DNA of 63,706 nucleotides, the filler included, from Octopus bimaculoides (lineage: Eukaryota): NCBI RefSeq assembly GCF_001194135.2. It is 7 parts of 6 records of this genome, joined end to end, with 100 filler letters (N's around TTAATTAATTAA, not from the genome) between each part and the next. Parts side by side here need not be neighbours in the genome. Positions count along the whole stretch, not along the records: positions 1 to 23,393 come from NC_068995.1; 6 more parts are not named here. The stretch is one strand, 5' to 3'. Position 1 is the first letter of the stretch, and every line of letters begins with the position of its first letter. This document shows, one piece after another, positions 716 to 23,393 of this stretch. Made by a program: the position numbers and the translations under genes. Below the pieces are notes generated by a model that was not told the DNA's origin, did no database searches, and was given only the letters and a program-made list of their open reading frames with translations.

Positions 716-1584
716 ATTATTAATAATAATAATAATATTAATAATAATAATAATAATAATAATANNNNNNNNNNNNNNNNNNNNNNNNNNNNNNNNNNNN
801 NNNNNNNNNNNNNNNNNNNNNNNNNNNNNNNNNNNNNNNNNNNNNNNNNNNNNNNNNNNNNNNNNNNNNNNNNNNNNNNNNNNNNNNNNNNNNNNNNNNN
901 NNNNNNNNNNNNNNNNNNNNNNNNNNNNNNNNNNNNNNNNNNNNNNNNNNNNNNNNNNNNNNNNNNNNNNNNNNNNNNNNNNNNNNNNNNNNNNNNNNNN
1001 NNNNNNNNNNNNNNNNNNNNNNNNNNNNNNNNNNNNNNNNNNNNNNNNNNNNNNNNNNNNNNNNNNNNNNNNNNNNNNNNNNNNNNNNNNNNNNNNNNNN
1101 NNNNNNNNNNNNNNNNNNNNNNNNNNNNNNNNNNNNNNNNNNNNNNNNNNNNNNNNNNNNNNNNNNNNNNNNNNNNNNNNNNNNNNNNNNNNNNNNNNNN
1201 NNNNNNNNNNNNNNNNNNNNNNNNNNNNNNNNNNNNNNNNNNNNNNNNNNNNNNNNNNNNNNNNNNNNNNNNNNNNNNNNNNNNNNNNNNNNNNNNNNNN
1301 NNNNNNNNNNNNNNNNNNNNNNNNNNNNNNNNNNNNNNNNNNNNNNNNNNNNNNNNNNNNNNNNNNNNNNNNNNNNNNNNNNNNNNNNNNNNNNNNNNNN
1401 NNNNNNNNNNNNNNNNNNNNNNNNNNNNATATGCATGTAGTGAAGAATTATGTGTACCTACGCCGAATTAAGTCCACTGAATAAATTAATTTTACTATGA
1501 ATCGATGTAATTCATTTGTTTACTTCAAAGAAATCCACATTCTTATTGCATTTGTTTACCTGATACACATTTAACCACTGCAAT

Positions 1585-1609
1585 AGTAGTAGTAGTAGTT
1601 GTAGTAGTA

Positions 1610-1688
<79 letters not shown>

Positions 1689-1712
1689 TACTAATAATAA
1701 TAATATTAATAA
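1585..1712 (+). repeat. (AGT)n(AAT)n microsatellite directly 5' of the Dong-like element
   Basis: Direct read of the sequence. Confidence 0.95.
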
Positions 1713-4700
1713 ACTATGCTCGGCAATAAATCTATCAACAAAAAATACAGACGAATACAGATCTGTTAGCCTTAAGAAGGTACGTTACGACCAATGTTTA
1801 CATGCAGAGAACTCGGTGACGCTGTTGTCTCAAAAAATTGACCCTAAACAAACAAATCCGTCCGCTAATGTCAACGTCGAAGCTCGTCATGCCTCAATGA
1901 TAACAAAGCAAATTACAAACCAGATTAGTTGTCGACCAGATTGCAAAGGACCATGTACTCAATATAGATCTGTTAGCCTTAAGAAGCTACGTTACGAGCA
2001 ATGTTTACATGTAGAGAACTCGGAGACGGTGTTGTCTCAAAAATTTAACTCTAAACAGACAGATCCGTCCCTTAATGTCAACGTCGAAGTTCCTCGTGCC
2101 TCAGTTAACAAAGTAAAATACAAACCGGAATGGTCATCGACCGGATTACAAAGGACCACGTACTCGAACGTTGAACAAGATTCGAGGCGAAAAATCAGCT
2201 ACTAGTTCAAATCTTCCCGACACACAGGAGTTGGAAGTACCCCACAACCGGAATATTCCAACAGATGGCCATCCATGTTCGTCATCAAATAACCAAAAGA
2301 AAAAGAATGAAAAATGGTCTAGGGAAGATGATAAAGAAGTTCTTACGGCCTTCTACCATGCCATATATCTCCCCACAAATAAATCTAATACAATACAAAC
2401 CTACTTAAACTGGAGACAGAAACACCCTGAAGTAAGACCCTACATAGAGAGTAACAAACTTGTCAACGTCAGAAGAAACATTACGAAAAAAATTACTAAC
2501 TGAAGTAGTGATTGACCAAATTAAACAAGGAGTAAGGGATAAAAAGAACGAAGCTGCGGCTAAAGAAGATACTACAGAGGAAATAATTACAGACAAGCCC
2601 AGGACTGATGAAAACGCAGTAGTTATTGAAAGAATTAATGTAACTGATAGGCAAAGTGAAATACTCTCTAAACCAACCATCTACTAAGGTAGATGAAAAT
2701 CAAATAGATGCAAAAAGTCACACAAATATTGACCCATCAGAACTACATAATCTAAAAAATCAAATCATGATTGAATGGCTGAAAACTAAAGAAACCAGTA
2801 TGAATGAACGCGATACTCTCCCAATAATTCGCAATTCTAACCAAAAGCAGAAAATTGGTAAAATCCGCCTTGCACTTAAAGGATATAATTTCAGCTAATA
2901 ATGTTGGTATTACAGATCTCAACCACCTGTACTATGCATCCGCGAAAATCTCAACGATTCTATGTGGTGAAAAGATTAGAAAACGACAACATTCCCACAA
3001 AAAGCCTTCTTGGCAAGAGCGCATTCAACACCGAATTAAGCTACTTAGATCTGACATAGAATGCTTGAAAAACCTTAAGTTTGACAAGACTACCAAACTT
3101 ACAAAACCCCGAAAATTAAAGAAAAATATAATATGAAAACCATACTTGACATTGATGCCATCGTAGAAACCATCAAGCAAAAGGTATGTGCTAAAGCTGC
3201 CAGCATAGCAAGGTATGAAAAGCGCGTTATATTCTTCAAGGATAACAACGTGTTCAAAACTAACCCCCCAAATTTTTTACAGGAAGATAGGGAAAACACC
3301 AGTTACAGTAAAGTCTGTCCCATCAAAAGAATAAGTGCAGGAATTTTGGAATAAAATTTGGGCAGAAGAAAAAACACACAATGAAAAGGCCCCTTGGATT
3401 AATAGAATATCTACAGACTTAGACTGCTTAGAGGAGCAGAAGTGGGCGGGTGTCAAGGTAGAAGATATAAGTCTCCAGGAAAAAATAAAATTCCTAACTT
3501 CTGGTTGAATGCCTTCCCAAAGTGCCACGAACTATTAACAAAACTTTACAACGATGTTTTGCAACATCCTAGTATGATACCCGCTAGGCTAGTTAATAGT
3601 ATTACATTCCTACTTCCAAAAAATTAAGAAACAAGTGAACCAAAAAAATAGACCCATAACCTGATTAACAACAATGCATAAAACGCCAACATCTATCCTG
3701 ACTGAATATATCCATATTTTTTTTTAATAGAAAGTAGCATATTCCCTAATGAGCAAAAAAGGATGTAAACGTGGATCTTATGGTTGTAAAGATCAGCTAC
3801 TCATCAATAAGATGATCTTAGAAGGTTGTCACAAACGACACAAAAACTTGTTAATAGCCTGCATATACTATAAAAAAGCTTTTGATAGTTTACCACATAG
3901 CTGGATTAAGAAAAGTCTGAAAATGTATAAAATAGCGCCTACTCTGCGAAACTTTTGCCTGTAAGTATGAGATCATGGTGAACCACACTGACTTTGAACA
4001 GTGACAATGGATCTCTAAATGCTGGAGATGTAAAAATTTCCATGCTGACTCACTATCACCACTCCTCTTCTGTCTAGCCTTAATACCTCTCTCAAAATTG
4101 CTCAATGCTGCACAGTACGGTTATAAAATGTTTGATAAAAATATAAATCATCTCATTTACATGAATGATTTAAAGCTCTTTGCAAAAAATGACCAATAAC
4201 TCAAGGGCTTACTAGCGATTTTTAAACAATTCAGTGATGATATCAGGATGCAATTTGGTCTCGATAAATGTACAAAAGCTACCTTTATCAAAAGAAAAAT
4301 GACAGAAACATCTAACATTAACCCTGACCAGCAGAATGTCATAAAAGAGTTAGAACCAGCGGAGAGCTACAAATACCTAGGGGTACTTGAAGGGGACAGA
4401 ATCAGGCATTCAGTGATGAGGGAAAGGATCAGAAGAGAATGTGATCGCAGGGTGAAAGCAATACAATGCAAGAAACAGGATCGAAGCGATCACTGCTTTA
4501 GCCATACCAGTCGTGACTTACAGTTTCAATATCATTAACTGGTCAATTACTGAAATATGTAATCTTGACAAAAAAATACGAAAACTGTTGACAATGCATA
4601 GAATGCACCACCCTAAGGCAGATATAGAAAGGCTTTATCTACCAAGAAAAGAGGGAGGTCGTGGACTTTTACAACTGGCATTAACAATGAAGATTGCCAC

Positions 4701-5415
4701 GATTGGCCTAGACACCAACCTGAAAAACTCTGAGGACTGGTTGTTAAAACTTGTCTCAAAACATGAAAACAAGAAAGCATCATACTCAGTAACAAAACAG
4801 GCAAAGGAATATCTAAGTGAATTCCAAATACAACAAATTCCGGAATTAGACATACTAGAAACAAGGACAGAAAAAGCTAAGCGCAGAAAAAGCTAAGCGC
4901 ATGAAAACCCGTGCTAAAACTGCTGCCTTAGATATTCCAGCTGATAAATGGCAAGAAAAACCTCTTAATAGCAAATACCCAAAGAGAACGAATAACGCCG
5001 ATGTTGACAAAGCCCTTACCCATCAATGGCTAATGGCTTTTGGCTTAAAATCTGAAACAGAAGGGTTTATCATAGCAGCCCAAGATCAATGCCTTCCTAT
5101 AAGGAACTACCAGGCAAACATATTAAAGAACGGCAGCTTCCCAACATGTCGCCTATGTCAACAACAAAATGAAACCATTGATCATATTGTCTCCATGTGC
5201 AGTCTTCTTGCGCCTACAGAGTATCTCAACAGGCATGATAGTGCTGCACAATATATTCACTGGGTAATTTACAAAAACCTGGACTTGCCCCATGATAAAA
5301 ACTGGTGGGAACACAAACCACCTACAGTGCTGGAAAATAATCACATTTCACTCATCTGGAACTTCACCATTCAAACTGACAGAAAGATAGATGCAAATAG
5401 GCCAAACATCATATT
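1713..5415 (+). mobile_element. Near full-length R4/Dong-clade RLE non-LTR retrotransposon, dead (many stops and frameshifts); 3' end lost in N gap
   Basis: N-terminal KWSREDDKEVLTAFY...W...HP domain. RT motifs [72 protein letters not shown]. Knuckle CRLCQQQNETIDHIVSMC, RHDSAAQYIHW, and RPNII at the gap edge. Confidence 0.93.
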
Positions 5416-6883
5416 NNNNNNNNNNNNNNNNNNNNNNNNNNNNNNNNNNNNNNNNNNNNNNNNNNNNNNNNNNNNNNNNNNNNNNNNNNNNNNNNNNNNN
5501 NNNNNNNNNNNNNNNNNNNNNNNNNNNNNNNNNNNNNNNNNNNNNNNNNNNNNNNNNNNNNNNNNNNNNNNNNNNNNNNNNNNNNNNNNNNNNNNNNNNN
5601 NNNNNNNNNNNNNNNNNNNNNNNNNNNNNNNNNNNNNNNNNNNNNNNNNNNNNNNNNNNNNNNNNNNNNNNNNNNNNNNNNNNNNNNNNNNNNNNNNNNN
5701 NNNNNNNNNNNNNNNNNNNNNNNNNNNNNNNNNNNNNNNNNNNNNNNNNNNNNNNNNNNNNNNNNNNNNNNNNNNNNNNNNNNNNNNNNNNNNNNNNNNN
5801 NNNNNNNNNNNNNNNNNNNNNNNNNNNNNNNNNNNNNNNNNNNNNNNNNNNNNNNNNNNNNNNNNNNNNNNNNNNNNNNNNNNNNNNNNNNNNNNNNNNN
5901 NNNNNNNNNNNNNNNNNNNNNNNNNNNNNNNNNNNNNNNNNNNNNNNNNNNNNNNNNNNNNNNNNNNNNNNNNNNNNNNNNNNNNNNNNNNNNNNNNNNN
6001 NNNNNNNNNNNNNNNNNNNNNNNNNNNNNNNNNNNNNNNNNNNNNNNNNNNNNNNNNNNNNNNNNNNNNNNNNNNNNNNNNNNNNNNNNNNNNNNNNNNN
6101 NNNNNNNNNNNNNNNNNNNNNNNNNNNNNNNNNNNNNNNNNNNNNNNNNNNNNNNNNNNNNNNNNNNNNNNNNNNNNNNNNNNNNNNNNNNNNNNNNNNN
6201 NNNNNNNNNNNNNNNNNNNNNNNNNNNNNNNNNNNNNNNNNNNNNNNNNNNNNNNNNNNNNNNNNNNNNNNNNNNNNNNNNNNNNNNNNNNNNNNNNNNN
6301 NNNNNNNNNNNNNNNNNNNNNNNNNNNNNNNNNNNNNNNNNNNNNNNNNNNNNNNNNNNNNNNNNNNNNNNNNNNNNNNNNNNNNNNNNNNNNNNNNNNN
6401 AAAGATAATACTCTGTATTAGACACAATGTAGTACTTGTACTTGTCATAAAAATATTGAATGTTCATAACTACAAAGACTTTTTTGATATCAGATACAGT
6501 GGATCGTGTCTGTTCTAAGTGTCAACAACATGATGAATGCTACCATTTACCTTTTTCTGTTGTTCTACATTGAAGAAGACTAAGAAGTCGTTTTTCAGAG
6601 AACAATTAAATAATAAAGTAAACTAATAGGAATTGAGAATGTTTTCATTTTATTCAATCTATATTATTGAACTGAATCTGTTATATTTGTTATTGATATC
6701 TGATTGACCACAGTGAATTTTGGTGCATGTTAATAATTTGAACACTTTTATTGTAGAATTGGGGTGGGGGAGTTTTCAGGTTTTGATAAGAAAATATATT
6801 CGATTAGACCTTCTGTTCTGTTTAAAGTTCAGCAGCTAATATTTTTGCAGACCTCTCGAAATTTCTGGATAAAAACAGTTCAT

Positions 6884-9031
6884 TCAATATGCCATAATTT
6901 CAGAATTCTCATCAGTTTCTTCCACAGATGAGGATAGTTCTGCAAAAGGTGGAAACCTTTTAGCAAGAGGTCTTTCAGATATACGCAAAGGTGAGGTGTC
7001 TTCGTCTTCAGGTAGTGANNNNNNNNNNNNNNNNNNNNNNNNNNNNNNNNNNNNNNNNNNNNNNNNNNNNNNNNNNNNNNNNNNNNNNNNNNNNNNNNNN
7101 NNNNNNNNNNNNNNNNNNTAACGCTCCTCATTTCATCCATTATTTCGAAATCTTCTTCAGTAACACTCCTTATTTCATCCAGTCTGTCGATTTCTGTTCC
7201 AATAGCGCTCCTCACTTCATCCAGTCTATCGATCTCTTCTTCAGTAACGCTCCTCTCTTCATCCAGTCTATCAATCGTTTTTTCAGTAATACTCCTTCTT
7301 TCATCCAGTATATCGATCTCTTCTTCAATAACGCTCCTCATTTCATTCAGTCTATCCATCTCTCCTTCAATAACGCTCATCTGCTCATCATATTTAACTG
7401 GTGACACGCTAGCTGTAGCTCCTGGTAGAAGTTCTCCAGATCTTGAACGAGTTTCATCTCGAATTGATTCTTTAATTTCAGGAGGTAGATCCATTAAGTC
7501 TTGGCCAGGTTCTTCAGATGAAACACTTGATAGTCTAACAGGTGTTAAAGATTGTGAATGTCGATAACTTGATGTCCTACTTGCGTCACCCTGCTGGAGA
7601 TTTCTTTGCCTATCGTCCTCTCCACTATCTGGTGGAGGTTCTCCAGATCTTGAACGAGTTTTATCTCGAATTGATTCTTCAGTTTCAGGAGGTAGATCCA
7701 TTAAGTCTTGGCCAGGTTCTTCGTAAACAGATGAAATACTTGATAATCTACCAGGTGCTAAAGATTGTGAATGTCGATAACTTGATGTCCTACTGAGTTC
7801 GGGTTGCCCTCTGGAATATTCGACACTGGGAATTTCATCCTCCCTAAAAAGCAATTGGGACCGACTTAAGTCACCGGAGCGATATGGGTGAGATGAGTCC
7901 CGCTGTTCCATAAGTTGTTCCCAGACATCAAGGCCATGGTGAGTTGATGCTTTTTGTTTCGCAATTCTATCCAAAGTTTCAGTAGCTGCAGCTCCTTGTG
8001 AAGTTTCTCCAGACCTTGATTTAGATGATATACTTGCGTCACCCTGCTGGAGATTTCTTTGCCTATCGTCCTCTTCACTATCTGGTGGAGGTTCTCCAGA
8101 TCTTGAACGAGTTTTATCTCGAATTGATTCTTCAGTTTCAGGAGGTAGATCCATTAAGTCTTGGCCAGGTTCTTGNNNNNNNNNNNNNNNNNNNNNNNNN
8201 NNNNNNNNNNNNNNNNNNNNNNNNNNNNNNNNNNNNNNNNNNNNNNNNNNNNNNNNNNNNNNNNNNNNNNNNNNNNNNNNNNNNNNNNNNNNNNNNNNNN
8301 NNNNNNNNNNNNNNNNNNNNNNNNNNNNNNNNNNNNNNNNNNNNNNNNNTTGATGCTTTTTGTTTCGCAATTCTATCCAAAGTTTCAGTAGCTGCAGCTC
8401 CTTGTGAAGTTTCTCCAGACCTTGATTTAGATGATATACTTGCGTCACCCTGCTGGAGATTTCTTTGCCTATCGTCCTCTTCACTATCTGGTGGAGGTTC
8501 TCCAGATCTTGAACGAGTTTTATCTCGAATTGATTCTTCAGTTTCAGGAGGTAGATCCATTAAGTCTTGGCCAGGTTCTTGGTAAGCAGTTGCAATACTT
8601 GATAGTCTAACAGGTGCTAAAGATTGTGAATGTCGATAACTTGATGTCCTACTGGGTTCGGGTTTCCCTCTCGGATATTCGACACTGGGAATTTCATCAT
8701 CCCTAAGAAGCAATTGGGACCGACTTAAGTCACCGGAGCGATATGGGTGAGATGAGTCCCGCTGTTCCATAAGTTGTTCCCAGACATCAAAGCCACGGTG
8801 AGTTGATGTTTTTTGTTTCGCAATTCTATCCAAAACTTCAGTAGCTGTAGCTCCTAGTGATTGAGATGATATACTTGCGTCACCCTCAAGTTCAGGCCGT
8901 TTTGCTTCATTATAACTTTCCTCTCCACTATCTTGGGGCGTAGACGCTGCTAAAGGCAATAACCTTCTTTCATAAAACTGTTCTTCATCTAGAATATCTT
9001 CATCATTAAAACCTACCTGACTTAAGTTCAT
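6884..9031 (-). CDS. Uncharacterised acidic S/E/R/P-rich repeat protein (151-aa repeats + 14-aa repeats), ~580-730 aa depending on gap resolution
   Basis: ATG at 9031 (aagaATG, in-frame TAA 13 codons upstream). No stop or frameshift in any sequenced segment (9031-8350, 8175-7119, 7018-6884). After the 100-N gap the compositionally matching frame reads SLPEDEDTSPLRISERPLAKRFPPFAELSSSVEETDENSEIMAY* (TGA 6886-6884). AATAAA on minus at 6752-6747 and 6654-6649. Confidence 0.7.
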
Positions 9032-9699
9032 TCTTTGAGTAACATTAATATCAATGAGGATGCACGGTTAATATGTTTTATGAATGTTCACCACACTTAT
9101 GGCAGTTGATTTTGTATTGAGCGTTTGTAGATGTCCTCTCAAAGCCTATTGTGAATATTTTAAGATAAAAATATATTTTAGTTTAATATGACTGGATATA
9201 AGAATGTTTTATAGTTGTCATACAACATATCAACTCATCACTATGCGTTCGGTATTTCATACATATTTATGTAACTAACACGTTTATACTTAGACACATA
9301 CACAAACATATAATCAGAATACGGACGCCATACGCATATCCACACATATACTGTAGACACACACCTGCACACATATACATGTGCATGAAAACACACATAC
9401 ATGCATGAGGACACTCGCTCCCACATATACACTTAGATACACGCGCACACACATGCTTTTTCTAACATCTTGGAAAAGGAAGCATAAAGAATTATACAAA
9501 TGAACTTGCGACCCTCTATGTGATCAATGGATCTGCAAGAAACAGCGACCATATCTTCCTCAAATCACATCTTGCCATCAATACACAGAGATTGGTGGGG
9601 GTGCAAAATATGACAATTTATGTTCCTTTTTCTTTTTCAGGAACAGCTTGATATATTGGTGAACAGTTAACAGCGTTGGAGAGTAGAGCATAAAGATTA

Positions 9700-10195
9700 A
9701 AGTTGTAGTTGAAAAAACGTTAGCTGATATGGATGGTTGGAAGCCATCTGAATATTGGAAAAAGGTTACCCTTATCATGATGATTCGCACCTGGTGTCAA
9801 AATGCTGACATCATGAGTATTTCTCAATGTTCTGTGAACACTGTAAAGGCTGTTAGACGTGACATGGACAACTGCAACAGTGATTACGAAGCTGTTGCCG
9901 GTAGAAAGAGGCATAATATGCGTTTTGATTGCGTCTGCACGTTGGTTCAATTCAAACTGTTACGTGAACCTGCTGGAGACTTTGATTGATATCTGGTGGG
10001 AGAGGGCAGCTGCTGGAAAGCCATGTATGTGGCAGTAGCATTCGACCAAACTTTCAGAAAGAGCCAGAAGTGCTTGTCGGAGAATTTCTACGACTTCACC
10101 AGTCCCAATTTCTGACCTCCTAATTTCCCAGAAATTCAATCCCATAGATTATTGTGGGAGAAAGATATCAACCACCACTGCAACACTAAGGCCAA
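9700..10195 (+). mobile_element. maT/DD37D-like Tc1-mariner transposase remnant, internally deleted
   Basis: N-terminal HTH-like region (CSVNTVKAVRRDM...AVAGRKRH) jumps to WWERAAAGKPCMWQ*..., KCLSENFYDF..PNF*PPN and WEKDINHHCNTK, resembling the QQDSAP / WPPNSPDLNPLD region of maT transposases. Confidence 0.7.
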
Positions 10196-11019
10196 NNNNN
10201 NNNNNNNNNNNNNNNNNNNNNNNNNNNNNNNNNNNNNNNNNNNNNNNNNNNNNNNNNNNNNNNNNNNNNNNNNNNNNNNNNNNNNNNNNNNNNNNNNNNN
10301 NNNNNNNNNNNNNNNNNNNNNNNNNNNNNNNNNNNNNNNNNNNNNNNNNNNNNNNNNNNNNNNNNNNNNNNNNNNNNNNNNNNNNNNNNNNNNNNNNNNN
10401 NNNNNNNNNNNNNNNNNNNNNNNNNNNNNNNNNNNNNNNNNNNNNNNNNNNNNNNNNNNNNNNNNNNNNNNNNNNNNNNNNNNNNNNNNNNNNNNNNNNN
10501 NNNNNNNNNNNNNNNNNNNNNNNNNNNNNNNNNNNNNNNNNNNNNNNNNNNNNNNNNNNNNNNNNNNNNNNNNNNNNNNNNNNNNNNNNNNNNNNNNNNN
10601 NNNNNNNNNNNNNNNNNNNNNNNNNNNNNNNNNNNNNNNNNNNNNNNNNNNNNNNNNNNNNNNNNNNNNNNNNNNNNNNNNNNNNNNNNNNNNNNNNNNN
10701 NNNNNNNNNNNNNNNNNNNNNNNNNNNNNNTATACAAAAAGACAGAATGGCCATACGTGGAACGTCTTTGCGAATAGGTTTGCTGTCGCAAATTTGCTCA
10801 GTTCCACTTGCACAGCTCTGTATATTCTAGTGTGAAAAATTTATCCTTGTACCTCTACCGGTATGCTTACAGATGTTTTTATGACTGGCAAAACTTGAAG
10901 GGCGCTACAATAAAGCCAGAATACTGGTGTTTCTCCAACACAAGGCGCATACAATAGTCCACCATGACGATAAAAAGGTCAGGAACCAATGTATCTCCCT
11001 GAAGCACTCCAGCCAGTAT

Positions 11020-11810
11020 CTCAAAGAACCCCGTCATCCCGTCAGGCTCAGAGCAGGAGGGTCAAGGCTAAAAAGATATCAGATGCTGAATTTGCTGACG
11101 ACATAGTTCTGGTGGTAAACGCAGTGAGGAAGGCAGAGGAGTTGATGCAGGAGGTGGAGACTGTGTTGATGAGTGTGGGACTGAAAATGAATTAAATCAA
11201 GATGAAGTATCTGGTAGAGAGTATTAAGAAGCCAGAAAGGATTATAAATGTGGGTGGGAAGCCACTAGAGTTGGTTGAGGACCTCCTGTATCTGGGAGCA
11301 AAGATTGGGAACACATGTGGTGATATAGTTGAGAGGAAAAGCAAAGCCTGGGCGGCATGCCACAGTTTGAGATCCGTATGGACCTGAAGATCCGTCTCTT
11401 CATTGCTGCAGTGGAGTCTATGCTGTTGTATGGGTCTGAGACTTGGACATTGACCAAGAAACTCACTCAGATTGTGAATGGGTGCTACACGAGAATGCTG
11501 AGGATGGCTCTGAAAAGTCATCCGTATACACTGAGGATGAAGATCTCAGAGCTGCACGAGAGCCACCCAATAGTTAGCTCGAAAATAATACAGAGGAGAC
11601 TGAGGTTAACTGGACATGCTCACCGTCATTCAGAGTTGATACTGTAGGAGCCCCTACACGGACACACTAGAAGAGGGAAACCGAGGATGACATATGTTGA
11701 TGCCCTAAGGATAGACACTGGTCTCTGGAAGGGACAGGACACGGCAGCGATGGTGCGGGACAAAAACCGCTGGAGAGAACTCGTCCATGGATCTCGGGAA
11801 TTTTACCCGC
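11020..11810 (+). mobile_element. 3' portion of RTE-like LINE reverse transcriptase
   Basis: KISDAEFADDIVL...VGLKMN, EDLLYLGAKI, KIRLFIAAVESMLLYGSETWTLT, RRLRLTGHAHRH, RRGKPRMTYVD. Confidence 0.88.
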
Positions 11811-11872
11811 CCTATATATACATATATATATTATATTATATTATATTATATATATATTATATTATATCATAT

Positions 11873-11904
<32 letters not shown>

Positions 11905-11993
11905 NNNNNNNNNNNNNNNNNNNNNNNNNNNNNNNNNNNNNNNNNNNNNNNNNNNNNNNNNNNNNNNNNNNNNNNNNNNNNNNNNNNNNNNNN

Positions 11994-12042
<49 letters not shown>

Positions 12043-12199
12043 GAGAGAGATGGGTAGATTGTCGCCATTTTTATACTTGAAGGGGTACTTATCTATATAT
12101 AATTCTGAATCAATACACACACTTACTAGCACTCACATATGTATGTATCTATGTAGCTGTGTACGTATGCATGTATGTATGTATGTATGTATGTATGTA

Positions 12200-14362
12200 T
12201 TGCTGGTGAGTATTTACAAGTGTGATGAACCCACATACTGGCAGATTAACGCCTGTCTATATGCTCTGGCTACTATTGCAAAGTATTATATGAATGACAT
12301 TCAAAAAGTAAACAAAACCGAAATATCAAAGAAAGTACCAACATGGGTTTTGAAGACAGAGAAAAAGATAATTGGTTTACGGAAGACTATCAGTCATGTA
12401 ATGATGCTTATTGCATGCAAACAAGCAAATCACTATACGTCCCACCAACAGAAAGTAAAGAAGGAGATAAAAATGGTGTTTGGAGACAGCAAGAAAGAGG
12501 ACACTCACTTGCAAACTGATTACCCTCAAGCAAGAGCTACAAGCTGTCAGTGAAAAACTCAGACATCAGAAGAGAATAACCAAAAGAACAATAAATAAAA
12601 AATTTAACCGCAACCAGGCAACAGTATACAGATACATGAGAGGAGGAACAGTAAATATGACGGAAGCTCCTTCACGAGAAGATATAGACTCCTTCTGGAG
12701 GAAAATCTGGAGTGAAGAGATGAAATTTAACCAAGATGCTCTGTGAATGGAAGAATTCCGAAAAAAGTTATTGCTCCTGCATTACATCCAAGACATACAA
12801 CATTGATGGTGAAACTCTTGCAACTGTGATCCAAAAACTCCAGGATGGAAAAGCACCTGGAAGAGACTTGATTGTTGGATATTGGTACAAGAAGCTAACA
12901 TTCTACCGACCATATCTTATCAATTTGTACCAGCAAGCTCTCATTGGGAACAGTAGCATATCACACTGGTTAGCTCTGGCAGAGACAAAATTGATCCCCA
13001 AATGTAGAACCACCCACATGGCAAAAACTTACCGGCCAATTGCATGCCAGAACTTAATGTATAAAATATATACAGCAGGTTTAAACCTCTTCTTCCAGGA
13101 CCATTGTGTAACCAATAACATCATTACAGCAGAACAAGCAGCTGGGAAGAAGGGAGAACACATGTCACTAAAGAATACTACAGCCGAATAAAGAAAATTT
13201 GGACCTCAGAACTCCCTGCTTTCAATAAAACAGTGGCCCACAATGTGTTTGTAGTGCCAGTACTCATTAACATTTGGGCTGCTTGATTGGACGCTTGATG
13301 AGACCCGAGTCATTCAACACCCGAAAAATACTAACAAGCACACAATTTCCACATGAACAGGGATGTAGACCGCCTCTACCTAAAACGAAAGCAAGGTAGA
13401 AGAGGCTTAACATCGATCCAAAATGCATTTGAATGTCGCATCATATCCCTTCGGTGACATCTTTTAACTACCAAGTGTCGAAGTGCGTCCCTTGACCAAG
13501 TTTGCATGCATGAGGCTGATAATATCTTAAGACTTTGAAGGCAGCTCCTTGAGCAACACTCTTTGTCTGATAACCTAGAATACATGCTCAAAGAAGTCGC
13601 ACGATTCCACCGCAACGTATCATCAGATGAAAGAATGAGCCTATATGAGAAGACTATGCATAGATATGTTACTAGAAAGCTCCATGATGACAGTAACATC
13701 GATCATCAAAGCAGTTTATCATGGACCAATATCCAGATTACTACCTCCCACTTTGAACGGTATGCGTTTGCAATCCAGGAACAGGAAATATCAACCAAGT
13801 ACCTGATGCACAAAAGGGATAGAGATGCCGGTAAAGCTGCAAAGTGTGACAAGCGATGCAGACTTTGCGGAGTTCACACTGAAGATATCACCCACATCAT
13901 AAGCAGCTGTCCGAAAATGTCATTACGGTGTTATCTACCGATGAGATATGACGTTGTAGCTAGGACACTCTATAATACAATCTGTCGGAAGCATAATCCC
14001 AAGGACAAAAAAATAAGATCCCACAATATGGTGGTAGCCATGGCCACTTATAATAATAAGGAATACTGTTGGAATATACCAGTAAAGACCTCAGTAAAAT
14101 GTAAGCGCAACAGAGCTGATATAATGATTTGGGATAGTGAAAAAGAGAACACCTATGCTGGGCTATTGAGAAATCTGCAGTTGCTCTATCCAGATTACAA
14201 GTTCAGGTTTATGCCTGTAATTATTGGGGCCCTGGGATAGGTAACACACTGCCTAAATACCAATCTTGAGAAATTGGGCTTCTCAAAACCAGAAGGGAGA
14301 AAGCTAATTCGAAGACTACAGATCCAGTCCATCACTGGAACTGTAAAAATCTGTAAAACTTA
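12200..14362 (+). mobile_element. Second family of RLE-type non-LTR retrotransposon (R4/NeSL-like), internally deleted (RT core and part of RLE missing)
   Basis: KAPGRDLIVGYWYK, YRPIACQNLMYKIYT, QAAGKKG, then a jump to post-RT DVDRLYLKRKQGRRGL; CRLCGVHTEDITHIISSC, MRYDVVAR, RADIMIWD, MPVIIGALG; ends ITGTVKICKT*. Confidence 0.85.
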
Positions 14363-15195
14363 AGTCATCCAGGTGTTACGAGAATGTTTCATTTTGTCAA
14401 ATCAAAAAGGCTCCCGTTTTCACTGGAAGACGTTAAGATGATGACATCTAACTGTAAAGTCTGTACTGAACTAAAAGCAGCATTTTTCAAGCCTCTCAAT
14501 CTCATCTGATGAAGGCTAATCAACCGTTTGAGAGACTCAGTCTGGATTTCAAGGGTCCTCTACCATCAGTGACACTTAACAAATACCTGCTGACTATTGT
14601 TGACGAATACTCACGTTTCCGTTTGCATTTGCCTGTGCTGATACTTCTGCTTCTACTGCCATTTGTTGCCTCTCTCAACTGTTTGCTATTTGTGTAATGC
14701 CATCATACGTCCACAGTGATAGAGGATCTGCATTTATGTCAGAGGAATTGAGATCTTTCCTAATATAGAAAGGAGTAGCAACAAGTCGCACAACTCCATA
14801 CAATCTTCGTTGCAACGGTCAGGTGGAGAGACTGAATGGTACGCTGTGGAAAGCCATTACCCTATCCCTCAAATCCTGTGCTTTACCAATCAGTCATTGG
14901 GAGCAAGTACTTACAGGCGCTCTGCACGCTATCAGATCGCTGCTCAGCACAGCTACAAATGAAACTCAACATGTACGCCTATTTTCCTACAACTGCAAAT
15001 CTACGATGGGAACAACACTACCCAACTGGCTTCTGACTCCCGGACCTGTGTACTTGAAAAGGAATGTCAGATAATCCAAGTATGACCCCCTGGTTGATGA
15101 AGTAGAACTTTTAGACTGTAACCCTCAATACGCACTTGTACGTTTATCTGATGGACGGGAAACAAGCGTGTCACTGAGACAGCTGGTTCCAATCC
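14363..15195 (+). mobile_element. Ty3/Gypsy integrase fragment
   Basis: HPGVTRMFHFVKSK...CKVCTELK (HHCC finger), PFERLSLDFKGPLP...LTIVDEYSRF, HSDRGSAFMSEE, TTPYN..CNGQVERLNGTLWK (DDE core). Confidence 0.9.
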
Positions 15196-15640
15196 CCGAG
15201 ACTACCATACTGTAGGTTCTTATTTCTTTAACCTCGAAGTTTTCCTTCCAACGGATCTCATTATACAGTGCCCTAACTACATCATGTCTCATCAGTAGAT
15301 AAACCGCGGTGACATTTTTGGACAACTGCTTATGATGTGGGTAATATCTTCGGTGTTAACTCCACAAAGTCTGCATCGATTGTCACATTTTGATGCTTTT
15401 CCTGCGCCACTGTCCCTTTTGTGCATCAGGTATTTGGTTGATATTTCTTGTTTCTGGATTGCAAGCGCATATTTTTCAAAGTGGGAGGTAGTAATCCGGT
15501 TGTTGGTCCATGATAGACTGCTTTAATTATCAGTGTTACTATCATCATGGAGCTTTCTACTAACATATTCTGCTGATATTCGCCCAGCCTTTCATCTGAT
15601 GATACGTTTCGGTAGAGGCGTTTGACTTCTTCGGGCATGT
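15196..15640 (-). mobile_element. Inverted fragment of the same RLE family as 12200-14362
   Basis: Its reverse complement aligns to ~13585-14010 at roughly 80% by eye (e.g. aacgtatcatcagatgaaag; aaatatcaaccaa.tacctgatgcacaaaaggga). Confidence 0.88.
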
Positions 15641-16072
15641 ATGTATGCAGGTATGCATGTATGTATATATGTACGTACGTATGTGTGTGTATGTATGTAT
15701 GTATGTATGTATGTATGTATGTATGTATGTATGTATGTATGTATCAGTTCAAATATGCTGCAGGCATATTCGAAACTGTATGAATGCCTTTCATTGTATT
15801 TTGCAATGGAGAAAATTTCTTACTGCAGAGAATTAGGGGGTGCATACACCGATTCAGCCCATAACGCACCTAACCAGATTGTGGGATGCATGCATTCCAG
15901 AGTGGTTATCTCCTCTTCGGCCACAGACAACAGAAAGGTAACATTACGAACTGACACGAGAGACAGGTCCCTCTTATGATATTCCAGATATATTCAATGA
16001 CTAGTTGCGCTACTCAGCGGCTCACCATAAATACTGTACGTGGTGACAGCGCTAAGCAAATATGCTTGAGGA

Positions 16073-16117
<45 letters not shown>

Positions 16118-16180
16118 GTGTTGTGTATCCATGTATACTTATTGGCCATTCAACAATGTGTGCGTGCGCGAGCGCGCGTG

Positions 16181-16223
<43 letters not shown>

Positions 16224-16335
16224 ATATTTTTAAACTTCTTTTTCAATCTATATTTTGATATTCCCTTTTTATTTTTTATCTTTATTTTATATCTACACAT
16301 ATATTTTATGTGTTTTATATTTGTCTGGTGTAGTC

Positions 16336-16511
16336 GGGTGGGACTAGCACCTCTGATGGGGAGATTGTCGCACCCTTTTAGGATCGGTCTGCCCACCTTG
16401 GTCCCCACTTGACTCCCAGCTTTTACCTAGGGTTCCTCGTAACTATTTGCATGTAACAGCAGTCACACCCCCGGGCAACGGCTTCGACAGTCCGGCAAAA
16501 CTAGGTGAGGG
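16336..16511 (+). ncRNA. HDV-like self-cleaving ribozyme fold at RTE 5' end (predicted cleavage 5' of G16336)
   Basis: P1 GGGTGGGACT(A)GC 16336-48 / GCAGTCACACCC 16459-70. P2 TTTACCTAG 16422-30 / CTAGGTGAG 16501-09. P3 GGT/ACT around L3 TCCTCGTA 16434-41. P1.1 GG followed by GCAAC; short P4; catalytic-position C16496 in GCAAAA. Confidence 0.65.
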
Positions 16512-18742
16512 TAGCCGACGGATCTGAAACCCTCAGTGAGTAACTCAGAGTTTGCCTACCCTTGGCATGCAAAGACTGGTTCCGGCAGACTGGGCGGACG
16601 AGACCAAAAGTGGTCCAATGGCTAAGAAGGCGGTTCCAGCAGGCGTTGTGGAGCGCTTAGGACAGAACAAGGCGCGAAGACGTTCTGGTTTTCCACTGTA
16701 GCAGGAAGGTCTCCAACGTAACGGTTCACCGTGCCACTGGATCAAGGTCTCATCTGCCGAGAGAGTGGGACTGTCCGCGTGCAACGAGTCTTCCACTTTA
16801 ATCAACCTCTCGCATAAGTATTTATGTATCCCAATCCTAACTTCCCACTGATGTCCTGCGGCCACGGGGGAATGGCGAAAGTGACAGGTGGAGGTAGTCA
16901 CTGGAAGTCATAGTCACGAACCTGCAAATAGGCGGCTTGGGACTTTGGTCGTTGTCCTTTGGATTCGAGGCAGCGGAGGACTTCGGCAGCATCTCAGGAG
17001 ACTGAGCAACCGTTTACAAATGCACTGCTCACCCCAGTAAGGGAGAGACCTAGAAAAGGTGAACTAAACAAAGTCTGCCCTACGCCGTATGGCCAGTTTA
17101 CCGCAGCGGGCAGACTTACCGATTTGTAGTCGATTCCAATTGAAAAAGAAGAAACTCATCATCGGGACGTGGGACGTGCGTACCCTTTTTGATCGTGACA
17201 ATGTCCCAAGATCCCAGGGAAGGACAGCCCTTGTATCCACCGAACTGTCGAGATACAGCATCGACATCGCGGCCTTGAGTGAAACCCGACTAGCCGAAGA
17301 GGGATCGGTAACCGAATCCAACGGATACAACTTTTTCCGGAAAGGAAAGAACCAGAACGAAGACCGCCTCCACGGGATTGGACTTGCCACCGGACCCAAA
17401 CACTTCATACAGATCCCCGATCTCGCGAATGGTGTCAATGAAAGGCAGATGAATATCCGCCTCCCAATCAGCAACGGGCGATTCACCACTATCATTAGCG
17501 CCTACACCTCACCATGACATCCACGGAGGAAGTCAAGGAGCAGTTTTACACCGACCTTGACACTCTACAACGTACCACGCCTGCCACTGACACGCTCATC
17601 CTGTTGGGTGATTTCAACGCCAGAGTTAGCAGCGACTGCAATGAGAGGCGGTGAGTGATTGGGAAACACGATGTAGACAAGATGAACAGCAACGGACTTC
17701 TGCTGTGCAAGTGCGCAGAACATGAATTGCTCATCACAAACACAGTCTTTAGGCAGGCTGATAAATGCAAGAAAGCGTGAATGCATCCCCGATCTAAACA
17801 GTGGCATCTCATAGACTACATCATCACCCGTCAGCGCGACAGCAGTGACGTCCTCACCAACGGGGCAATGCGCACCGCCTTGTTCGAGCCAAGCTCAACA
17901 TTCGCATAGTCCCCCACCAACTCAAGCGCCCCGAGCTCATCAAATAGGCCTCCAACACAGCAAGACTCCAGTCTTCCAAATACCAGCGGGACTTCCAGAA
18001 CAGCCTTGATGAAATACTCGATGCAGCAGGTCTGCTTACTGGAGGACCAGAGGGAAAATGGAAACAAGTTCAAAGAAGCAGTCACTGAGACAGCTAAAGC
18101 AGTCCTTGGCCCCAAGAAGCGGTATCAAGACTGGTTTGACGAAAACAATAAAGCCATCGGAGCCCTGTTAAAAGAGAAGAGAGCCGCCTACATCAACTGG
18201 CAGAACCATCCCATCTGTGTCGCACGATGTGGCCATATTCAAGGAATGCAAGACCAAAGCTCAGAGTGAACTTCATGCCGTACAAAATGCTTAATGAGAA
18301 AAGAAAACCGAGGAAGTGCAGCTCTACGCCGACGTTGGCGTTAATCAGCTGCTTGGAGTTGTTCAACTCCAAGCAGCTGATTAATGCCATCAAAGTCATC
18401 TATGGACCTTCAACTAGAGAATCGGAACCCCTGCTCTCAGCTGATGGCTCCACCATCATCAAAAACAAAGAAAGTCACAGCGCAAGGTGGCAAGAACACT
18501 TCAACACTTCAGCCAGCTCAACCGCCCTTCCTTCGTCGACCAAACAGCCCTACAGCAGATCCACCAGCAGCCAACCCAGGAAGATCTGGACCTCCCGCCT
18601 AGCGGAGAAAAGGTACAGACCGTCATCAAACAGATGACCTACGGCAAAGAACCAGGAAGGGACGGAATACCTGCTGAGCTGTTCAAGTCGCTCGGATCCA
18701 CAGCCCTCAACACCTTCCATGACATCCTCTCGACCATCTGGT
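16336..18742 (+). mobile_element. RTE-clade LINE (BovB/RTE-like): intact-looking 5'UTR + APE endonuclease, truncated before the RT core
   Basis: GC-rich relative to flanks. ORF from 17089: IGTWDVRTLFD...IDIAALSETRL; ILLGDFNARV; WHLIDYII; YQDWFDEN; GKEPGRDGIPAELFK; frameshifted. Confidence 0.92.
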
Positions 18743-19057
18743 TCCAAGTTCAGTCCCACAATGTGGCATCCTAGACAAGTGTCTTCTACTATAGCCTTGG
18801 GTCCACCAAAGTCTTGTGAGTGGATTTGGTAGACGGAAACTGAAAGAAGCCTCTGTCAGTGCTTGTTCCCCATCTCTTGACAACCGGAATTGGTGTGTTT
18901 ACGGCCCCATAAGTTAGTCGTTCGGCAAAAGAGACCGATACAATAAGTATCAGGCTTTTAACAAAATAAGTACTGCAGCCGATTCATTCGACTGAAAATT
19001 CTTCAAAGCGGTGTCCCAGCATGGCTGCAGTCTAATGACTGAAATAAATGATAAAAT
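18743..19057 (+). mobile_element. 5'-truncated tRNA-derived SINE; related copies at ~26760-26870 and ~57065-57440
   Basis: B-box-like agttcagtccc; shared body gtcttgtgagtggatttggtagacggaaactgaaagaagcc and tail cccagcatggc..cag..aatgactgaaa found again at 57065-57440. Confidence 0.75.
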
Positions 19058-19629
19058 ATGTAAGTATATACGCATACGCGCATGTGTGTATGTATAAGCG
19101 TATACGCGCATGTATGTATGTATGTATGTATGTTATGTGAGGTCGCTCTTGTGTTCTACTGGTAACATGTAACCCAATACAAGCTGTTGCATGGTCGGGT
19201 CGTCGGCGACTAAACTGGCACTAAACTGGCACCAAGCCTGCTTGGTGAGGAGGGTGACTGTTGGACACCCAGCGGGGCGAAATATATGTCCCGTCAAAGG
19301 GAGGAGGAACTCATGAATAGTCAACTGCCATCCAACAAATATGTGTAAATATGTATATATCGTTTCCTTTATGTATCGTTTTTTTTTTATATTCTTTTAT
19401 ATATATCATGGATCCCAGGCTGTTATTACAGTATCCTTCTAAAAGAGGAAAACTTGAAATAAAACCTGCGGTTGATGTGATTACTGATCATCTGGCTTAG
19501 GCTTGTCACAAACAATAATCACTGAAACTTAGAGAGTGGTGCTCGTGTAGTACAAGCGTTTGCCACTATAATCCAGTGATGTACAGATGTCTCTTTTGTG
19601 TTCTTCTCATCTGTCTTTCTTACAGATGA

Positions 19630-21672: not shown

Positions 21673-21689
21673 AAGTGCACTGTTGTACT

Positions 21690-22700: not shown

Positions 22701-22897
22701 TTCAGTTCGAACACGCTATATATATATACATATATAATTATATGTGTGTATATGCATGTATGTATGTATGTCTGTATGTATGTATGTATGTATGTAGTTC
22801 GAATACGCTATATATATACATATATAATTGTATGTGTGTATATGTATGTATGTATGTATGTATGTAGTTCGAATACGCTATATATATACATATATAG
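22700..22897. repeat. Compound tandem repeat: ~2.4 copies of agttcgaayacgctatatatatacatatata + (GTAT)n
   Basis: Anchor motif at ~22703, ~22796 and ~22866. Confidence 0.85.
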
Positions 22898-23325: not shown

Positions 23326-23393
23326 CTTGTGTGTGTGTGTGTGTGTGTGTGTGCATTTGTGTGTGTGTGCGCGTGTGTGTGTGCGTTTGTGTA

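What the first reader, a model, noticed from the sequence alone, without database searches (positions are those of the whole stretch)
6884..9031. Intact orphan repeat-protein ORF amid dead transposons
Seen: ~1.9 kb of sequenced ORF has no stop or frameshift, while every neighbouring TE ORF is broken. It has an upstream in-frame stop, A at -3 of the ATG, and two downstream AATAAA signals. The protein is acidic and looks disordered. It has an N-terminal AASTP, 2-3 copies of a 151-aa (453-bp) unit (EPGQDLMDLPPETEESIRDKTRSRSGEPPP...FDVWEQLMEQRDSSHPYRSGDLSRS...RTSSYRHSQSL), one internally deleted copy, then 14-aa repeats. Indels between copies keep the frame. Established: S-T-P is a polo-box docking motif and ExxR is the separase cleavage consensus; many ExxR motifs occur here (e.g. 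SVEYSR, EIDR). Inference: either a young lineage-specific gene (possibly germline or cell-cycle related) or cargo of an unrecognised virus-like or DNA element. I recognise no domain.
Basis: partly seen in the sequence, partly recalled or inferred. Interest (0 to 1): 0.75.

Follow-up and report, generated by a model that had tools for sequence, protein, structure and literature searches.

The report
Octopus-only fast-evolving repeat-protein gene
The reading frame is a real gene found only in octopuses, already listed in databases as "uncharacterized protein LOC128249525"; it encodes a mostly disordered acidic repeat protein with a helical rod, it changes unusually fast between species, and two assembly gaps stop anyone from calling it intact.

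Summary
The ORF lies on the minus strand of Octopus bimaculoides chromosome CM046615.1. It is RefSeq model XP_052829356.1 (LOC128249525, uncharacterized). The sequenced part is three open pieces: 9031-8351, 8175-7120 and 7018-6890. With the gap lengths as written, the pieces are not in one frame. Gap 2 is flanked by 232 identical bases, so either the contig ends overlap or one 453-nt period is missing; both readings restore the frame. The frame across gap 1 cannot be settled.

Among 1.84 billion representative proteins the only relative is O. vulgaris CAI9734162.1. It sits at the orthologous locus, where the same ATG opens an uninterrupted 1359-codon frame. No Pfam, PDB, transposon or viral relative was found, and there are no terminal repeats.

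AlphaFold gives low confidence for the 151-aa units and one confident helix for the 14-aa repeats. Between species the 411-nt 5' flank shows 2% substitutions, while the first 38 codons show pN 0.19 against pS 0.02. The 14-aa repeats look constrained. The ExxR and S-T-P motifs are no more frequent than chance.

Verdict: a taxon-restricted, rapidly evolving repeat-protein gene. Function is unknown and interest is modest.

The parts
9032..9442 (-). Conserved 5' flank, the putative promoter and 5' UTR. It holds TATAAA boxes at 9213-9208 and 9288-9283.
   Evidence: Against the O. vulgaris orthologous locus: 395 matches, 8 mismatches and 21 gap columns. About 290 nt of it recur at 82% in front of the neighbouring O. 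vulgaris gene (L001 2037-2327). The TATAAAA at 9213-9208 is identical in all three sequences. Promoter function is inferred.
8351..9031 (-). Coding piece 1: start codon, unique N-terminus (aa 1-48), a partial first unit (8887-8579) and the start of the next unit (8578-8351), which is cut by gap 2.
   Evidence: 227 open codons. Matches aa 1-197 of XP_052829356.1. The N-terminus aligns with O. vulgaris CAI9734162.1.
8176..8349 (.). Assembly gap 2 (174 N), lying inside the 453-nt repeat.
   Evidence: 7944-8175 and 8350-8581 are 100% identical over 232 nt. Merging the two copies, or assuming a gap of 221 nt (232+221=453), puts pieces 1 and 2 in frame. With 174 N they are off by one base.
7120..8175 (-). 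Coding piece 2: full unit 8172-7720, internally deleted unit 7719-7513, partial unit 7512-7390, linker, then the 14-aa repeats.
   Evidence: 352 open codons. Unit boundaries. AlphaFold pLDDT is 36-63 over aa 1-258.
7119..7378 (-). Array of 42-nt (14-aa) repeats with six copies visible, cut by gap 1. Predicted as one long acidic helix.
   Evidence: TRF gives period 42, 6.2 copies and 78% matches. The helix covers aa 260-351 at pLDDT 93-97. Columns 9, 10, 11 and 13 are held in 16-18 of 18 copies across the two species. pN/pS is 0.49 within O. vulgaris and 0.70 between species.
7019..7118 (.). Assembly gap 1 (100 N), lying inside or just after the 14-aa repeat array.
   Evidence: O. vulgaris has 13 copies of the 14-aa repeat and about 270 more residues before the stretch that weakly resembles piece 3. 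The gap may therefore hide 0.8 kb or more.
6887..7018 (-). Candidate coding piece 3 (43 codons plus TAA). The frame is not proven.
   Evidence: Frame 0 is acidic and Ser-rich like the rest of the protein. It resembles O. vulgaris ORF aa 750-785 weakly (shuffle p 0.01-0.03), while the other open frame shows no resemblance. The RefSeq model skips this piece.
6607..6752 (-). Conserved 3' flank module holding both AATAAA signals, a putative 3' UTR and polyadenylation region.
   Evidence: 70-74% identical to L001 5710-5860, which begins 37 nt after the stop of the neighbouring O. vulgaris gene CAI9734161.1. AATAAA positions.
6515..6622 (-). Last exon of the RefSeq model (35 codons plus stop), probably an annotation patch.
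   Evidence: aa 548-582 of XP_052829356.1 map here. Both 'introns' of the model span the N gaps. This exon has no counterpart in O. vulgaris and begins downstream of both AATAAA signals, overlapping the end of the conserved 3' module.

Best explanation
The feature is a genuine protein-coding gene restricted to the genus Octopus: O. bimaculoides LOC128249525, with orthologue O. vulgaris CAI9734162.1.

Shown:
- It is read from one large exon that begins at the ATG at 9031.
- About 290 nt of its conserved, TATA-containing 5' flank recur in front of a neighbouring repeat-protein gene in O. vulgaris.
- The protein has a short N-terminus, then tandem 151-aa acidic Ser/Arg/Glu-rich units that AlphaFold models with low confidence.
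- The units are followed by a rod of 14-aa repeats predicted with high confidence as one long helix. The rod has a hydrophobic stripe and a net charge of about -4 per repeat.
- The open frame is kept in both species, and all indels between copies are in frame.

Inferred:
- The repeats grow and shrink by unequal exchange or slippage. O. bimaculoides has multiplied the 151-aa unit. O. vulgaris has one unit-like region but 13 helix repeats, plus a basic Pro/Arg/Val-rich C-terminal half.
- Selection keeps the frame open and preserves the helix repeat, while the residues of the disordered part change at or above the silent rate.
- The protein most likely works as a structural or scaffolding protein. 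The acidic helical rod and disordered arms would bind partners through charge and phosphorylation-prone Ser/Asp/Glu clusters rather than through a folded domain.
- Expression from the shared, conserved promoter is probably tissue-specific.
- The tissue and the partners are unknown.
For: Identity and locus.

Orthology:
- E-values are 9e-33 for piece 1 and 3e-93 for the RefSeq model P0001 against P0002.
- The 5' flank is collinear, with 8 mismatches in 403 aligned bases.
- The start context is identical in the two species.

Frame maintenance:
- O. vulgaris has 1359 uninterrupted codons from the same ATG.
- Under simulated neutral drift that frame stays open in 0.05% of runs or fewer at 0.04 substitutions per site. 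The two O. bimaculoides pieces stay open in 8% and 3% of runs at 0.08.
- The open pieces exceed all shuffles, and indels between copies are multiples of three.

Structure: low pLDDT for the units and a helix at pLDDT 93-97 for the 14-aa repeats. pI is 4.5-4.7.

Constraint pattern:
- 14-aa repeats: pN/pS is 0.49-0.70, with near-invariant columns.
- N-terminus: Sd 0.5 of 22.7 sites and Nd 17.5 of 91.3 sites, Fisher p 0.02. Against the flank, p is 7e-9.
- Units: dN/dS is 1.3-1.5.

No known domain, structure, transposon or viral relative was found. The two species split about 34 Mya (PMC10700109).
Against: - No expression or protein evidence could be examined, and both database entries are computer predictions.
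- The frame across both gaps is unproven.
- The C-terminal half of the O. vulgaris ORF has no counterpart in the window, in 3.5 kb beyond it, or among annotated O. bimaculoides proteins.
- dN/dS of 1 or more is also what a decaying sequence shows. Within O. bimaculoides the copies give pN/pS of 1.0-1.6.
- Comparisons between repeat units may pair non-orthologous copies.
- The selection tests rest on few sites: 38 to 169 codons.
- The proposed scaffold function is an inference from composition and a single-sequence structure model.
Confidence: 0.72

Rival explanations
1. Assembly chimera or truncation. Pieces 1 and 2 belong to LOC128249525, but gap 1 hides much more than 100 bases, or it joins the gene to the 3' end of a different member of the same small family. 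On this reading, the gene 'end' at 6887 and the polyadenylation signals do not belong to this ORF as drawn.
For: - The 3' flank module matches the 3' flank of the O. vulgaris neighbour gene and not that of the orthologue.
- Piece 3 resembles the orthologue only weakly, at a position about 270 residues past the repeats.
- O. vulgaris has 13 helix repeats against 6 visible here.
- The assembly has seven N runs within 23 kb.
- The RefSeq model had to jump both gaps.
Against: - Piece 3 in frame 0 has the same acidic, Ser-rich composition as the rest, and its similarity to the orthologue's own downstream sequence is marginally significant.
- The scaffold order comes from one chromosome-scale assembly.
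- Nothing in the window shows a second family member.
Confidence: 0.35
2. A non-functional open frame. On this reading it is a recently dead gene or a coding-derived minisatellite, and the frame is open only because near-identical units were copied recently from one open unit.
For: - pN/pS is about 1 or above between copies and between species in the unit region.
- The non-redundant open sequence in O. bimaculoides is only about 350 codons. The 151-codon N-terminal stretch stays open in 10-42% of neutral simulations.
- No transcript evidence was seen.
Against: - The orthologous frame is open for 1359 codons after about 34 My of separation.
- The start codon context and 411 nt of upstream sequence are almost unchanged.
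- The 14-aa repeats, which differ by about 20% at the nucleotide level and so are old, keep key columns and show pN/pS below 1 in O. vulgaris.
- All indels are in frame.
Confidence: 0.1
3. An ORF carried by, or derived from, a transposable or virus-like element, for example an ORF1-like coiled-coil protein or cargo of a DNA element.
For: - The gene sits among retroelement debris.
- It has no introns.
- Its 5' and 3' flank modules recur at a second gene in O. vulgaris. A repeated element could in principle produce that pattern.
Against: - No reverse transcriptase, integrase, transposase, capsid or ORF1 family hit in either species' protein.
- No ORF2-like frame lies downstream on the same strand.
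- No terminal inverted repeats.
- No relative on 2.9 million viral contigs.
- Only two proteins in the whole library resemble it, which a multicopy element would not give.
- The locus is orthologous between species.
Confidence: 0.05
4. A cell-cycle protein that is docked by Polo-like kinase through S-T-P and cleaved by separase at ExxR sites.
For: S-T-P at aa 30-32 is kept in O. vulgaris. ExxR is mildly over-represented in piece 2, at 10 against 5.1 expected.
Against: - The ExxR excess comes from the same motifs copied with the units. In O. vulgaris it is not significant, at 12 against 8.9 expected.
- One S-[ST]-P is about what composition predicts.
- There is no similarity to any known separase substrate or kinetochore or cohesin protein in Pfam or PDB searches.
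Confidence: 0.03

Closest known systems
XP_052829356.1, uncharacterized protein LOC128249525 (Octopus bimaculoides, RefSeq Gnomon model)
   Same: It is this locus. Its aa 1-197 and 199-548 are pieces 1 and 2 of the window.
   Different: The model removes part of the repeat and hops over both N gaps with 'introns'. It ends in a 35-codon exon at 6622-6518 that begins downstream of both AATAAA signals, and it skips piece 3. Its 582-aa product is therefore a patched approximation.
CAI9734162.1 / A0AA36BIQ0, hypothetical predicted protein (Octopus vulgaris)
   Same: It is the orthologue. It shares the start codon and 5' flank, the N-terminus, the unit core around the W...DSS...DLS.SQ.L...DEIPS stretch, the junction ending in SPVKYDE, and the 14-aa helix repeats.
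   Different: It has only one unit-like region but 13 helix repeats. Its genomic frame runs on to 1359 codons, with a basic Pro/Arg/Val-rich repeat half (pI 11.5) that is not seen in O. bimaculoides. Amino-acid identity in alignable parts is about 51-67%.
CAI9734161.1 / A0AA36BGS8 (Octopus vulgaris), the neighbouring gene 7 kb upstream of the orthologue
   Same: It shares the 5' flank module (82% over about 290 nt) and the 3' flank module (70-74% over about 110-150 nt). It is also a domain-free repeat protein with charged helical repeats and basic Pro/Arg repeats.
   Different: Protein similarity is marginal, with a best E-value of 0.039 in a single pairwise comparison. Its annotated start lies about 330 nt after the conserved ATG, which there opens only a 4-codon frame.
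Charged helical repeat proteins (Pfam ERM_helical-type stretches; trichohyalin- or involucrin-like tandem-repeat structural proteins)
   Same: These are long, highly charged helices built from short tandem repeats, flanked by disordered repeats whose copy number varies between species. This is a resemblance in how the protein may work, drawn from general knowledge.
   Different: It is not a member. ERM_helical scores 19 and 34.4 bits against a cut-off of 40, and no other shared domain was found.

Membership tests
Same gene as RefSeq LOC128249525 | The protein maps to this locus at about 100% identity. | tested here: met
   P0001 aa 199-548 match 8169-7120 at 99.7%. Its aa 1-197 match piece 1. 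The locus look-up returns CM046615.1 with the window sequence.
Orthologue pair with O. vulgaris CAI9734162.1 | Significant protein similarity together with collinear flanking DNA. | tested here: met
   E-values are 9e-33 and 3e-93. Window 8921-9442 aligns to L001 10111-9585 at 91.6% with gaps counted, or 98% at aligned bases of the flank.
Orthologue pair with O. vulgaris CAI9734162.1 | Full-length collinearity, including the C-terminal half. | tested here: not met
   O. vulgaris ORF aa 480-1359 have no significant match in the window or in L002. Only piece 3 shows a weak resemblance. The gaps may be the cause.
Taxon-restricted (orphan) gene | No detectable homologue outside the lineage. | tested here: met
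   An exhaustive phmmer search of 1.84 billion representatives returned two hits, both from Octopus. Word-indexed searches of 5.8 billion clusters returned the same two, plus one low-complexity fish hit. Unannotated genomes of other cephalopods could not be searched.
Transposable-element or viral ORF | A hallmark domain such as reverse transcriptase, integrase, transposase, capsid or ORF1 (Transposase_22). | tested here: not met
   Pfam scans of all three pieces and of the 1359-aa O. vulgaris ORF gave no such family. No relative was found on viral contigs.
Transposable-element or viral ORF | Terminal repeats and many dispersed copies. | tested here: inconclusive
   No terminal inverted repeats around 6401-9600, and no second copy in the window or in L002. 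The flank modules do recur once in L001. Genome-wide copy number is not testable with these tools.
Pfam PF20492 ERM_helical | A score at or above the gathering cut-off of 40 bits. | tested here: not met
   19 bits for piece 2 and 34.4 bits for the O. vulgaris ORF.
Separase substrate or Polo-box ligand | The motif is present beyond what composition predicts. | tested here: not met
   ExxR occurs 10 times against 5.1 expected, and the sites are repeat-copied. In O. vulgaris it is 12 against 8.9 (not significant). S[ST]P occurs once against 0.4-0.9 expected.
Separase substrate or Polo-box ligand | Cleavage by separase, or phospho-dependent binding. | not testable with these tools
   This needs biochemical evidence.
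Helical repeat rod (coiled coil or single alpha-helix) | A confidently predicted continuous helix with hydrophobic positions spaced about 3.5 residues apart. | tested here: met
   The helix spans aa 260-351 at pLDDT 93-97. Hydrophobic residues dominate columns 1, 6, 9 and 12 of the 14-residue repeat. The oligomeric state is not testable here.

The most novel reading that the evidence does not exclude
LOC128249525 and its neighbour-type relatives may form a small Octopus-specific family. The members would be driven by one strongly conserved promoter module, and their coding bodies would be under diversifying selection, as seen in gamete-interaction or other conflict-driven proteins. The proteins would be block polyampholytes, with an acidic helical half and a basic Pro/Arg half, that assemble by charge into a tissue-specific material or condensate.
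Probability: 0.2. Interest if true: 0.5.

Novelty: new member of a known kind. Interest (0 to 1): 0.3.

Why it matters
Cephalopod genomes hold many lineage-specific genes of unknown role, and few have been examined closely. This one gives a compact example with three features:
- An intronless repeat gene whose promoter region is almost frozen over about 34 My, while its first codons change roughly nine times faster at replacement sites than at silent sites.
- Internal repeat arrays that have expanded differently in two species.
- A neighbouring gene in O. vulgaris that shares its flanking modules.

If expression proves tissue-specific, it would be a workable case for studying how new structural or reproductive proteins arise in octopuses.

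On the practical side, both public gene models at this locus look wrong. The O. bimaculoides model is patched across the gaps. The O. vulgaris model is probably cut at half length.

Tried and rejected
- The word-indexed protein search with piece 1 returned nothing. The exhaustive search then found two relatives, so the empty result was a limit of sensitivity or indexing, not true absence.
- Pfam gave only sub-threshold coiled-coil-like hits.
- PDB sequence searches gave only chance-level hits such as eS10 and SWM1, with E-values of 0.16 or worse.
- The viral contig scan was negative.
- Rfam on 6401-10195 found nothing.
- The search for terminal inverted repeats found only short chance pairs.
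- A search with the O. vulgaris C-terminal half found no O. bimaculoides counterpart. The one extra hit, a fish CNPase, is a Pro-rich low-complexity match and was rejected.
- The neighbour protein P0004 compared with the orthologue gave marginal similarity (E 0.039). This is kept only as a hint.
- Piece 3 compared with P0004 gave nothing.
- dN/dS between copies within O. bimaculoides has little power, with few differences and possible gene conversion.
- A fold search was not run, because most of the model has low confidence and a lone helix matches anything.
- No paper mentions the accession numbers.
Full report
**1. What is in the sequence**

The reading frame is on the minus strand. It consists of three stop-free pieces separated by two runs of N:
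- 9031-8351, 227 codons from an ATG;
- 8175-7120, 352 codons;
- 7018-6890, 43 codons followed by TAA at 6889-6887.

The ATG has A at -3, and an in-frame TAA lies 12 codons upstream. AATAAA occurs at 6752-6747 and 6654-6649. The two long pieces are the longest stop-free stretches in the whole window and exceed all 1000 shuffles of the same bases.

**2. The gaps, tested first**

With the N runs as written (174 and 100), the three pieces are not in one frame. A straight translation from the ATG runs into stops after gap 2.

Gap 2 sits inside the 453-nt repeat. The 232 bases on its two sides (7944-8175 and 8350-8581) are 100% identical. There are two readings:
- The two contig ends are the same sequence and should be merged. 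That gives one unit fewer and 502 codons from the ATG to gap 1.
- Exactly 221 bases are missing (232+221=453), which gives 653 codons.

Both readings put pieces 1 and 2 in frame (arithmetic). Other copies differ by only 0-3.4%, so the sequence cannot choose between them.

At gap 1, two of the three frames are open on the far side. Frame 0 is acidic and Ser-rich like the rest of the protein. It resembles residues 750-785 of the O. vulgaris frame weakly (shuffle p 0.01-0.03), and the other open frame does not. The claim of an 'intact' ORF is therefore plausible but unproven.

**3. Repeat anatomy**

The layout is as follows:
- a unique N-terminus, aa 1-48;
- a partial first unit, 8887-8579;
- a unit cut by gap 2, 8578-8351;
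- a full 151-aa unit, 8172-7720;
- a unit with an 82-codon internal deletion, 7719-7513;
- a partial unit, 7512-7390;
- a short linker;
- six 14-aa repeats, 7374-7123, which run into gap 1.

All length differences between copies are multiples of three: 18 nt, 246 nt and the 42-nt period.

**4. Identity**

An exhaustive HMMER search of 1.84 billion representative proteins gave two hits.

P0001 is XP_052829356.1, 'uncharacterized protein LOC128249525', on Octopus bimaculoides chromosome CM046615.1. It is this very locus. That model bridges both N gaps with 'introns', and it ends in a 35-codon exon at 6622-6518 that begins downstream of both AATAAA signals. It is a patched approximation.

P0002 is O. 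vulgaris CAI9734162.1, a 'hypothetical predicted protein' of 704 aa. Word-indexed searches of 5.8 billion clusters found nothing else that is credible. The accession numbers appear in no paper in the library.

**5. The orthologous locus**

The O. vulgaris locus (L001) has no gaps. The window's 5' flank and first codons (8921-9442) align to it at 91.6% with gaps counted. In the 411 nt upstream of the ATG there are 395 matches, 8 mismatches and 21 gap columns. The start context is identical.

From that ATG, the O. vulgaris frame is uninterrupted for 1359 codons. It holds:
- the same N-terminus;
- one unit-like region;
- 13 copies of the 14-aa repeat (12 in register and one a residue short);
- a spacer;
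- a basic half of roughly 39-aa Pro/Arg/Val-rich repeats (pI 11.5, against 4.5 for the first half).

The annotated 704-aa model leaves this frame through a 172-nt intron. The C-terminal half has no counterpart in the window, in the 3.5 kb beyond it, or among annotated O. bimaculoides proteins.

**6. Is it a gene or a relic?**

Neutral-drift simulations show that the 1359-codon frame would stay open in 0.05% of runs or fewer, even at 0.04 substitutions per site. The two O. bimaculoides pieces stay open in 8% and 3% of runs at 0.08. The species split about 34 Mya (PMC10700109). Together with the in-frame indels, this means the frame is being kept open by selection, most clearly in O. vulgaris.

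The pattern of change is uneven:
- The 14-aa repeats keep columns 9, 10, 11 and 13 in 16-18 of 18 copies. Their pN/pS is 0.49 within O. vulgaris and 0.70 between species.
- The unit region gives dN/dS of 1.3-1.5.
- The first 38 ungapped codons have 17.5 replacement changes over 91.3 sites against 0.5 silent changes over 22.7 sites (Fisher p 0.02). Replacement divergence there is 0.19, against 0.02 in the adjoining flank (p 7e-9).

So either the N-terminus is under diversifying selection, or the flank and silent sites are unusually constrained. The samples are small, and repeat units may be mispaired, so I treat positive selection as likely in the N-terminus but not proven.

**7. What the protein looks like**

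No Pfam family reaches its cut-off. The best is ERM_helical at 19 and 34.4 bits against a cut-off of 40, a generic charged-helix signal. No PDB sequence relative was found.

A single-sequence AlphaFold model of piece 2 gives pLDDT 36-63 for aa 1-258. It gives one continuous helix at pLDDT 93-97 for the 14-aa repeats. Hydrophobic residues occupy columns 1, 6, 9 and 12 of the repeat, an average spacing of 3.5, and the net charge is about -4 per repeat.

The N-terminus is acidic and has no hydrophobic signal-peptide-like stretch, by direct reading of the sequence.

The ExxR and S-[ST]-P motifs occur at about the frequency that composition predicts. The ExxR sites are largely the same motif copied with the units.

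**8. Not a mobile or viral element**

The evidence against a mobile or viral origin is:
- no hallmark domain;
- no ORF2-like frame downstream on the same strand;
- no terminal inverted repeats;
- no Rfam family;
- no relative on viral contigs;
- no second copy in the window;
- only two relatives among all library proteins.

They give sub-threshold but consistent hits to RVT_1, zf-RVT and rve, in frames split into many short pieces.

**9. A small family with shared flanks**

In O. vulgaris, about 290 nt of the 5' flank, including the TATAAAA and the ATG, recur at 82% identity. They lie 7.7 kb upstream of the orthologue's own flank, in front of the adjacent gene CAI9734161.1. That gene encodes a 1005-aa, domain-free protein with charged helical repeats and basic Pro/Arg repeats.

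About 110-150 nt of the window's 3' flank, which carry both AATAAA signals, match the sequence just after that gene's stop codon at 70-74%. Protein similarity between the two genes is marginal (E 0.039).

I read this as a local duplication that kept the regulatory ends while the coding bodies diverged. It also raises the possibility that gap 1 joins parts of two family members.

**10. Mechanism, with its status**

Shown:
- a maintained open frame in two species;
- a conserved start and flank;
- repeat arrays that differ between the species;
- a predicted helical rod and low-confidence (disorder-like) units;
- no known domain.

Inferred:
- transcription from the conserved TATA-containing flank as a single exon;
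- expansion and contraction of the units by unequal exchange or slippage;
- a structural or scaffolding role through charge and phosphorylatable Ser/Asp/Glu clusters;
- tissue-specific expression.

Unknown: the tissue, the partners and the true C-terminus in O. bimaculoides.

**11. Verdict**

The lineage-specific-gene reading is supported. The mobile-element reading and the motif-based cell-cycle reading are not. The gene is already in the databases as an uncharacterized protein. What this analysis adds is:
- the orthology with O. vulgaris;
- the unusual contrast in rates between the flank and the coding start;
- the shared flank modules;
- the likely errors in both gene models.

Interest is modest.

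Noticed in passing
L001 10001-14080 (O. vulgaris OX597828.1): The annotated 704-aa model CAI9734162.1 leaves the frame through a 172-nt intron. The genomic frame itself runs uninterrupted for 1359 codons into a basic Pro/Arg/Val-rich repeat half, and it overlaps a minus-strand gene model at 12331-22287. The annotation is probably truncated.
   Followed up: partly
L001 2037-5860: The adjacent O. vulgaris gene CAI9734161.1 (1005 aa, no Pfam domain) carries copies of the 5' flank module (82%) and the 3' flank module (70-74%) of the window's gene. In that copy the conserved ATG opens only a 4-codon frame, and an (AT)n run separates it from the annotated start.
   Followed up: partly
window 6515-6622, 7019-7118, 8176-8349: Both introns of the RefSeq model XP_052829356.1 coincide with the N gaps. 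Its last exon begins downstream of both AATAAA signals and overlaps the end of the conserved 3' flank module. The model looks like a workaround for the gaps.
   Followed up: yes
window 1564-5413 (+): A non-LTR retrotransposon-like reading frame with RVT_1 and zf-RVT hits below cut-off. It is split into about 11 short open pieces in different frames, so it has roughly ten or more stops and frameshifts, and it is cut by the gap at 5416-6400. It is tail to tail with the gene.
   Followed up: partly
window 10885-14237 (+): A second retroelement-like stretch, with an RVT_1 fragment and a zf-RVT tail, in about 9 open pieces and interrupted by two N gaps and microsatellites.
   Followed up: partly
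window 13539-14237 (+) and 15128-15522 (-): Two inverted, related copies of the same zf-RVT-type tail (the peptide stretches are clearly alike) flank an integrase-like (rve) fragment at 14470-15071. This looks like nested or rearranged retroelement debris.
   Followed up: no
window 17068-18771 (+) and 20035-21671 (+): Two further LINE-like stretches, with endonuclease-like N-terminal peptides and RVT_1 fragments, each in about 5 open pieces.
   Followed up: no
window 9687-9986 (+): A 100-codon open piece between the gene's 5' flank and the gap at 10196. It has only a weak DUF5093 hit (E 0.003, below cut-off), and its nature is unknown.
   Followed up: no
window 765-1428, 5416-6400, 10196-10730, 11905-11993: Four more N gaps lie in the window, along with many microsatellites: (TAA)n at 1611-1712, (AG)n at 11994-12050, (TATG)n or (ATGT)n at 12138-12200, 15637-15744 and 22751-22866, and (TG)n at 16074-16126 and 23328-23392. 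Several listed 'ORFs' that span gaps are artefacts.
   Followed up: no
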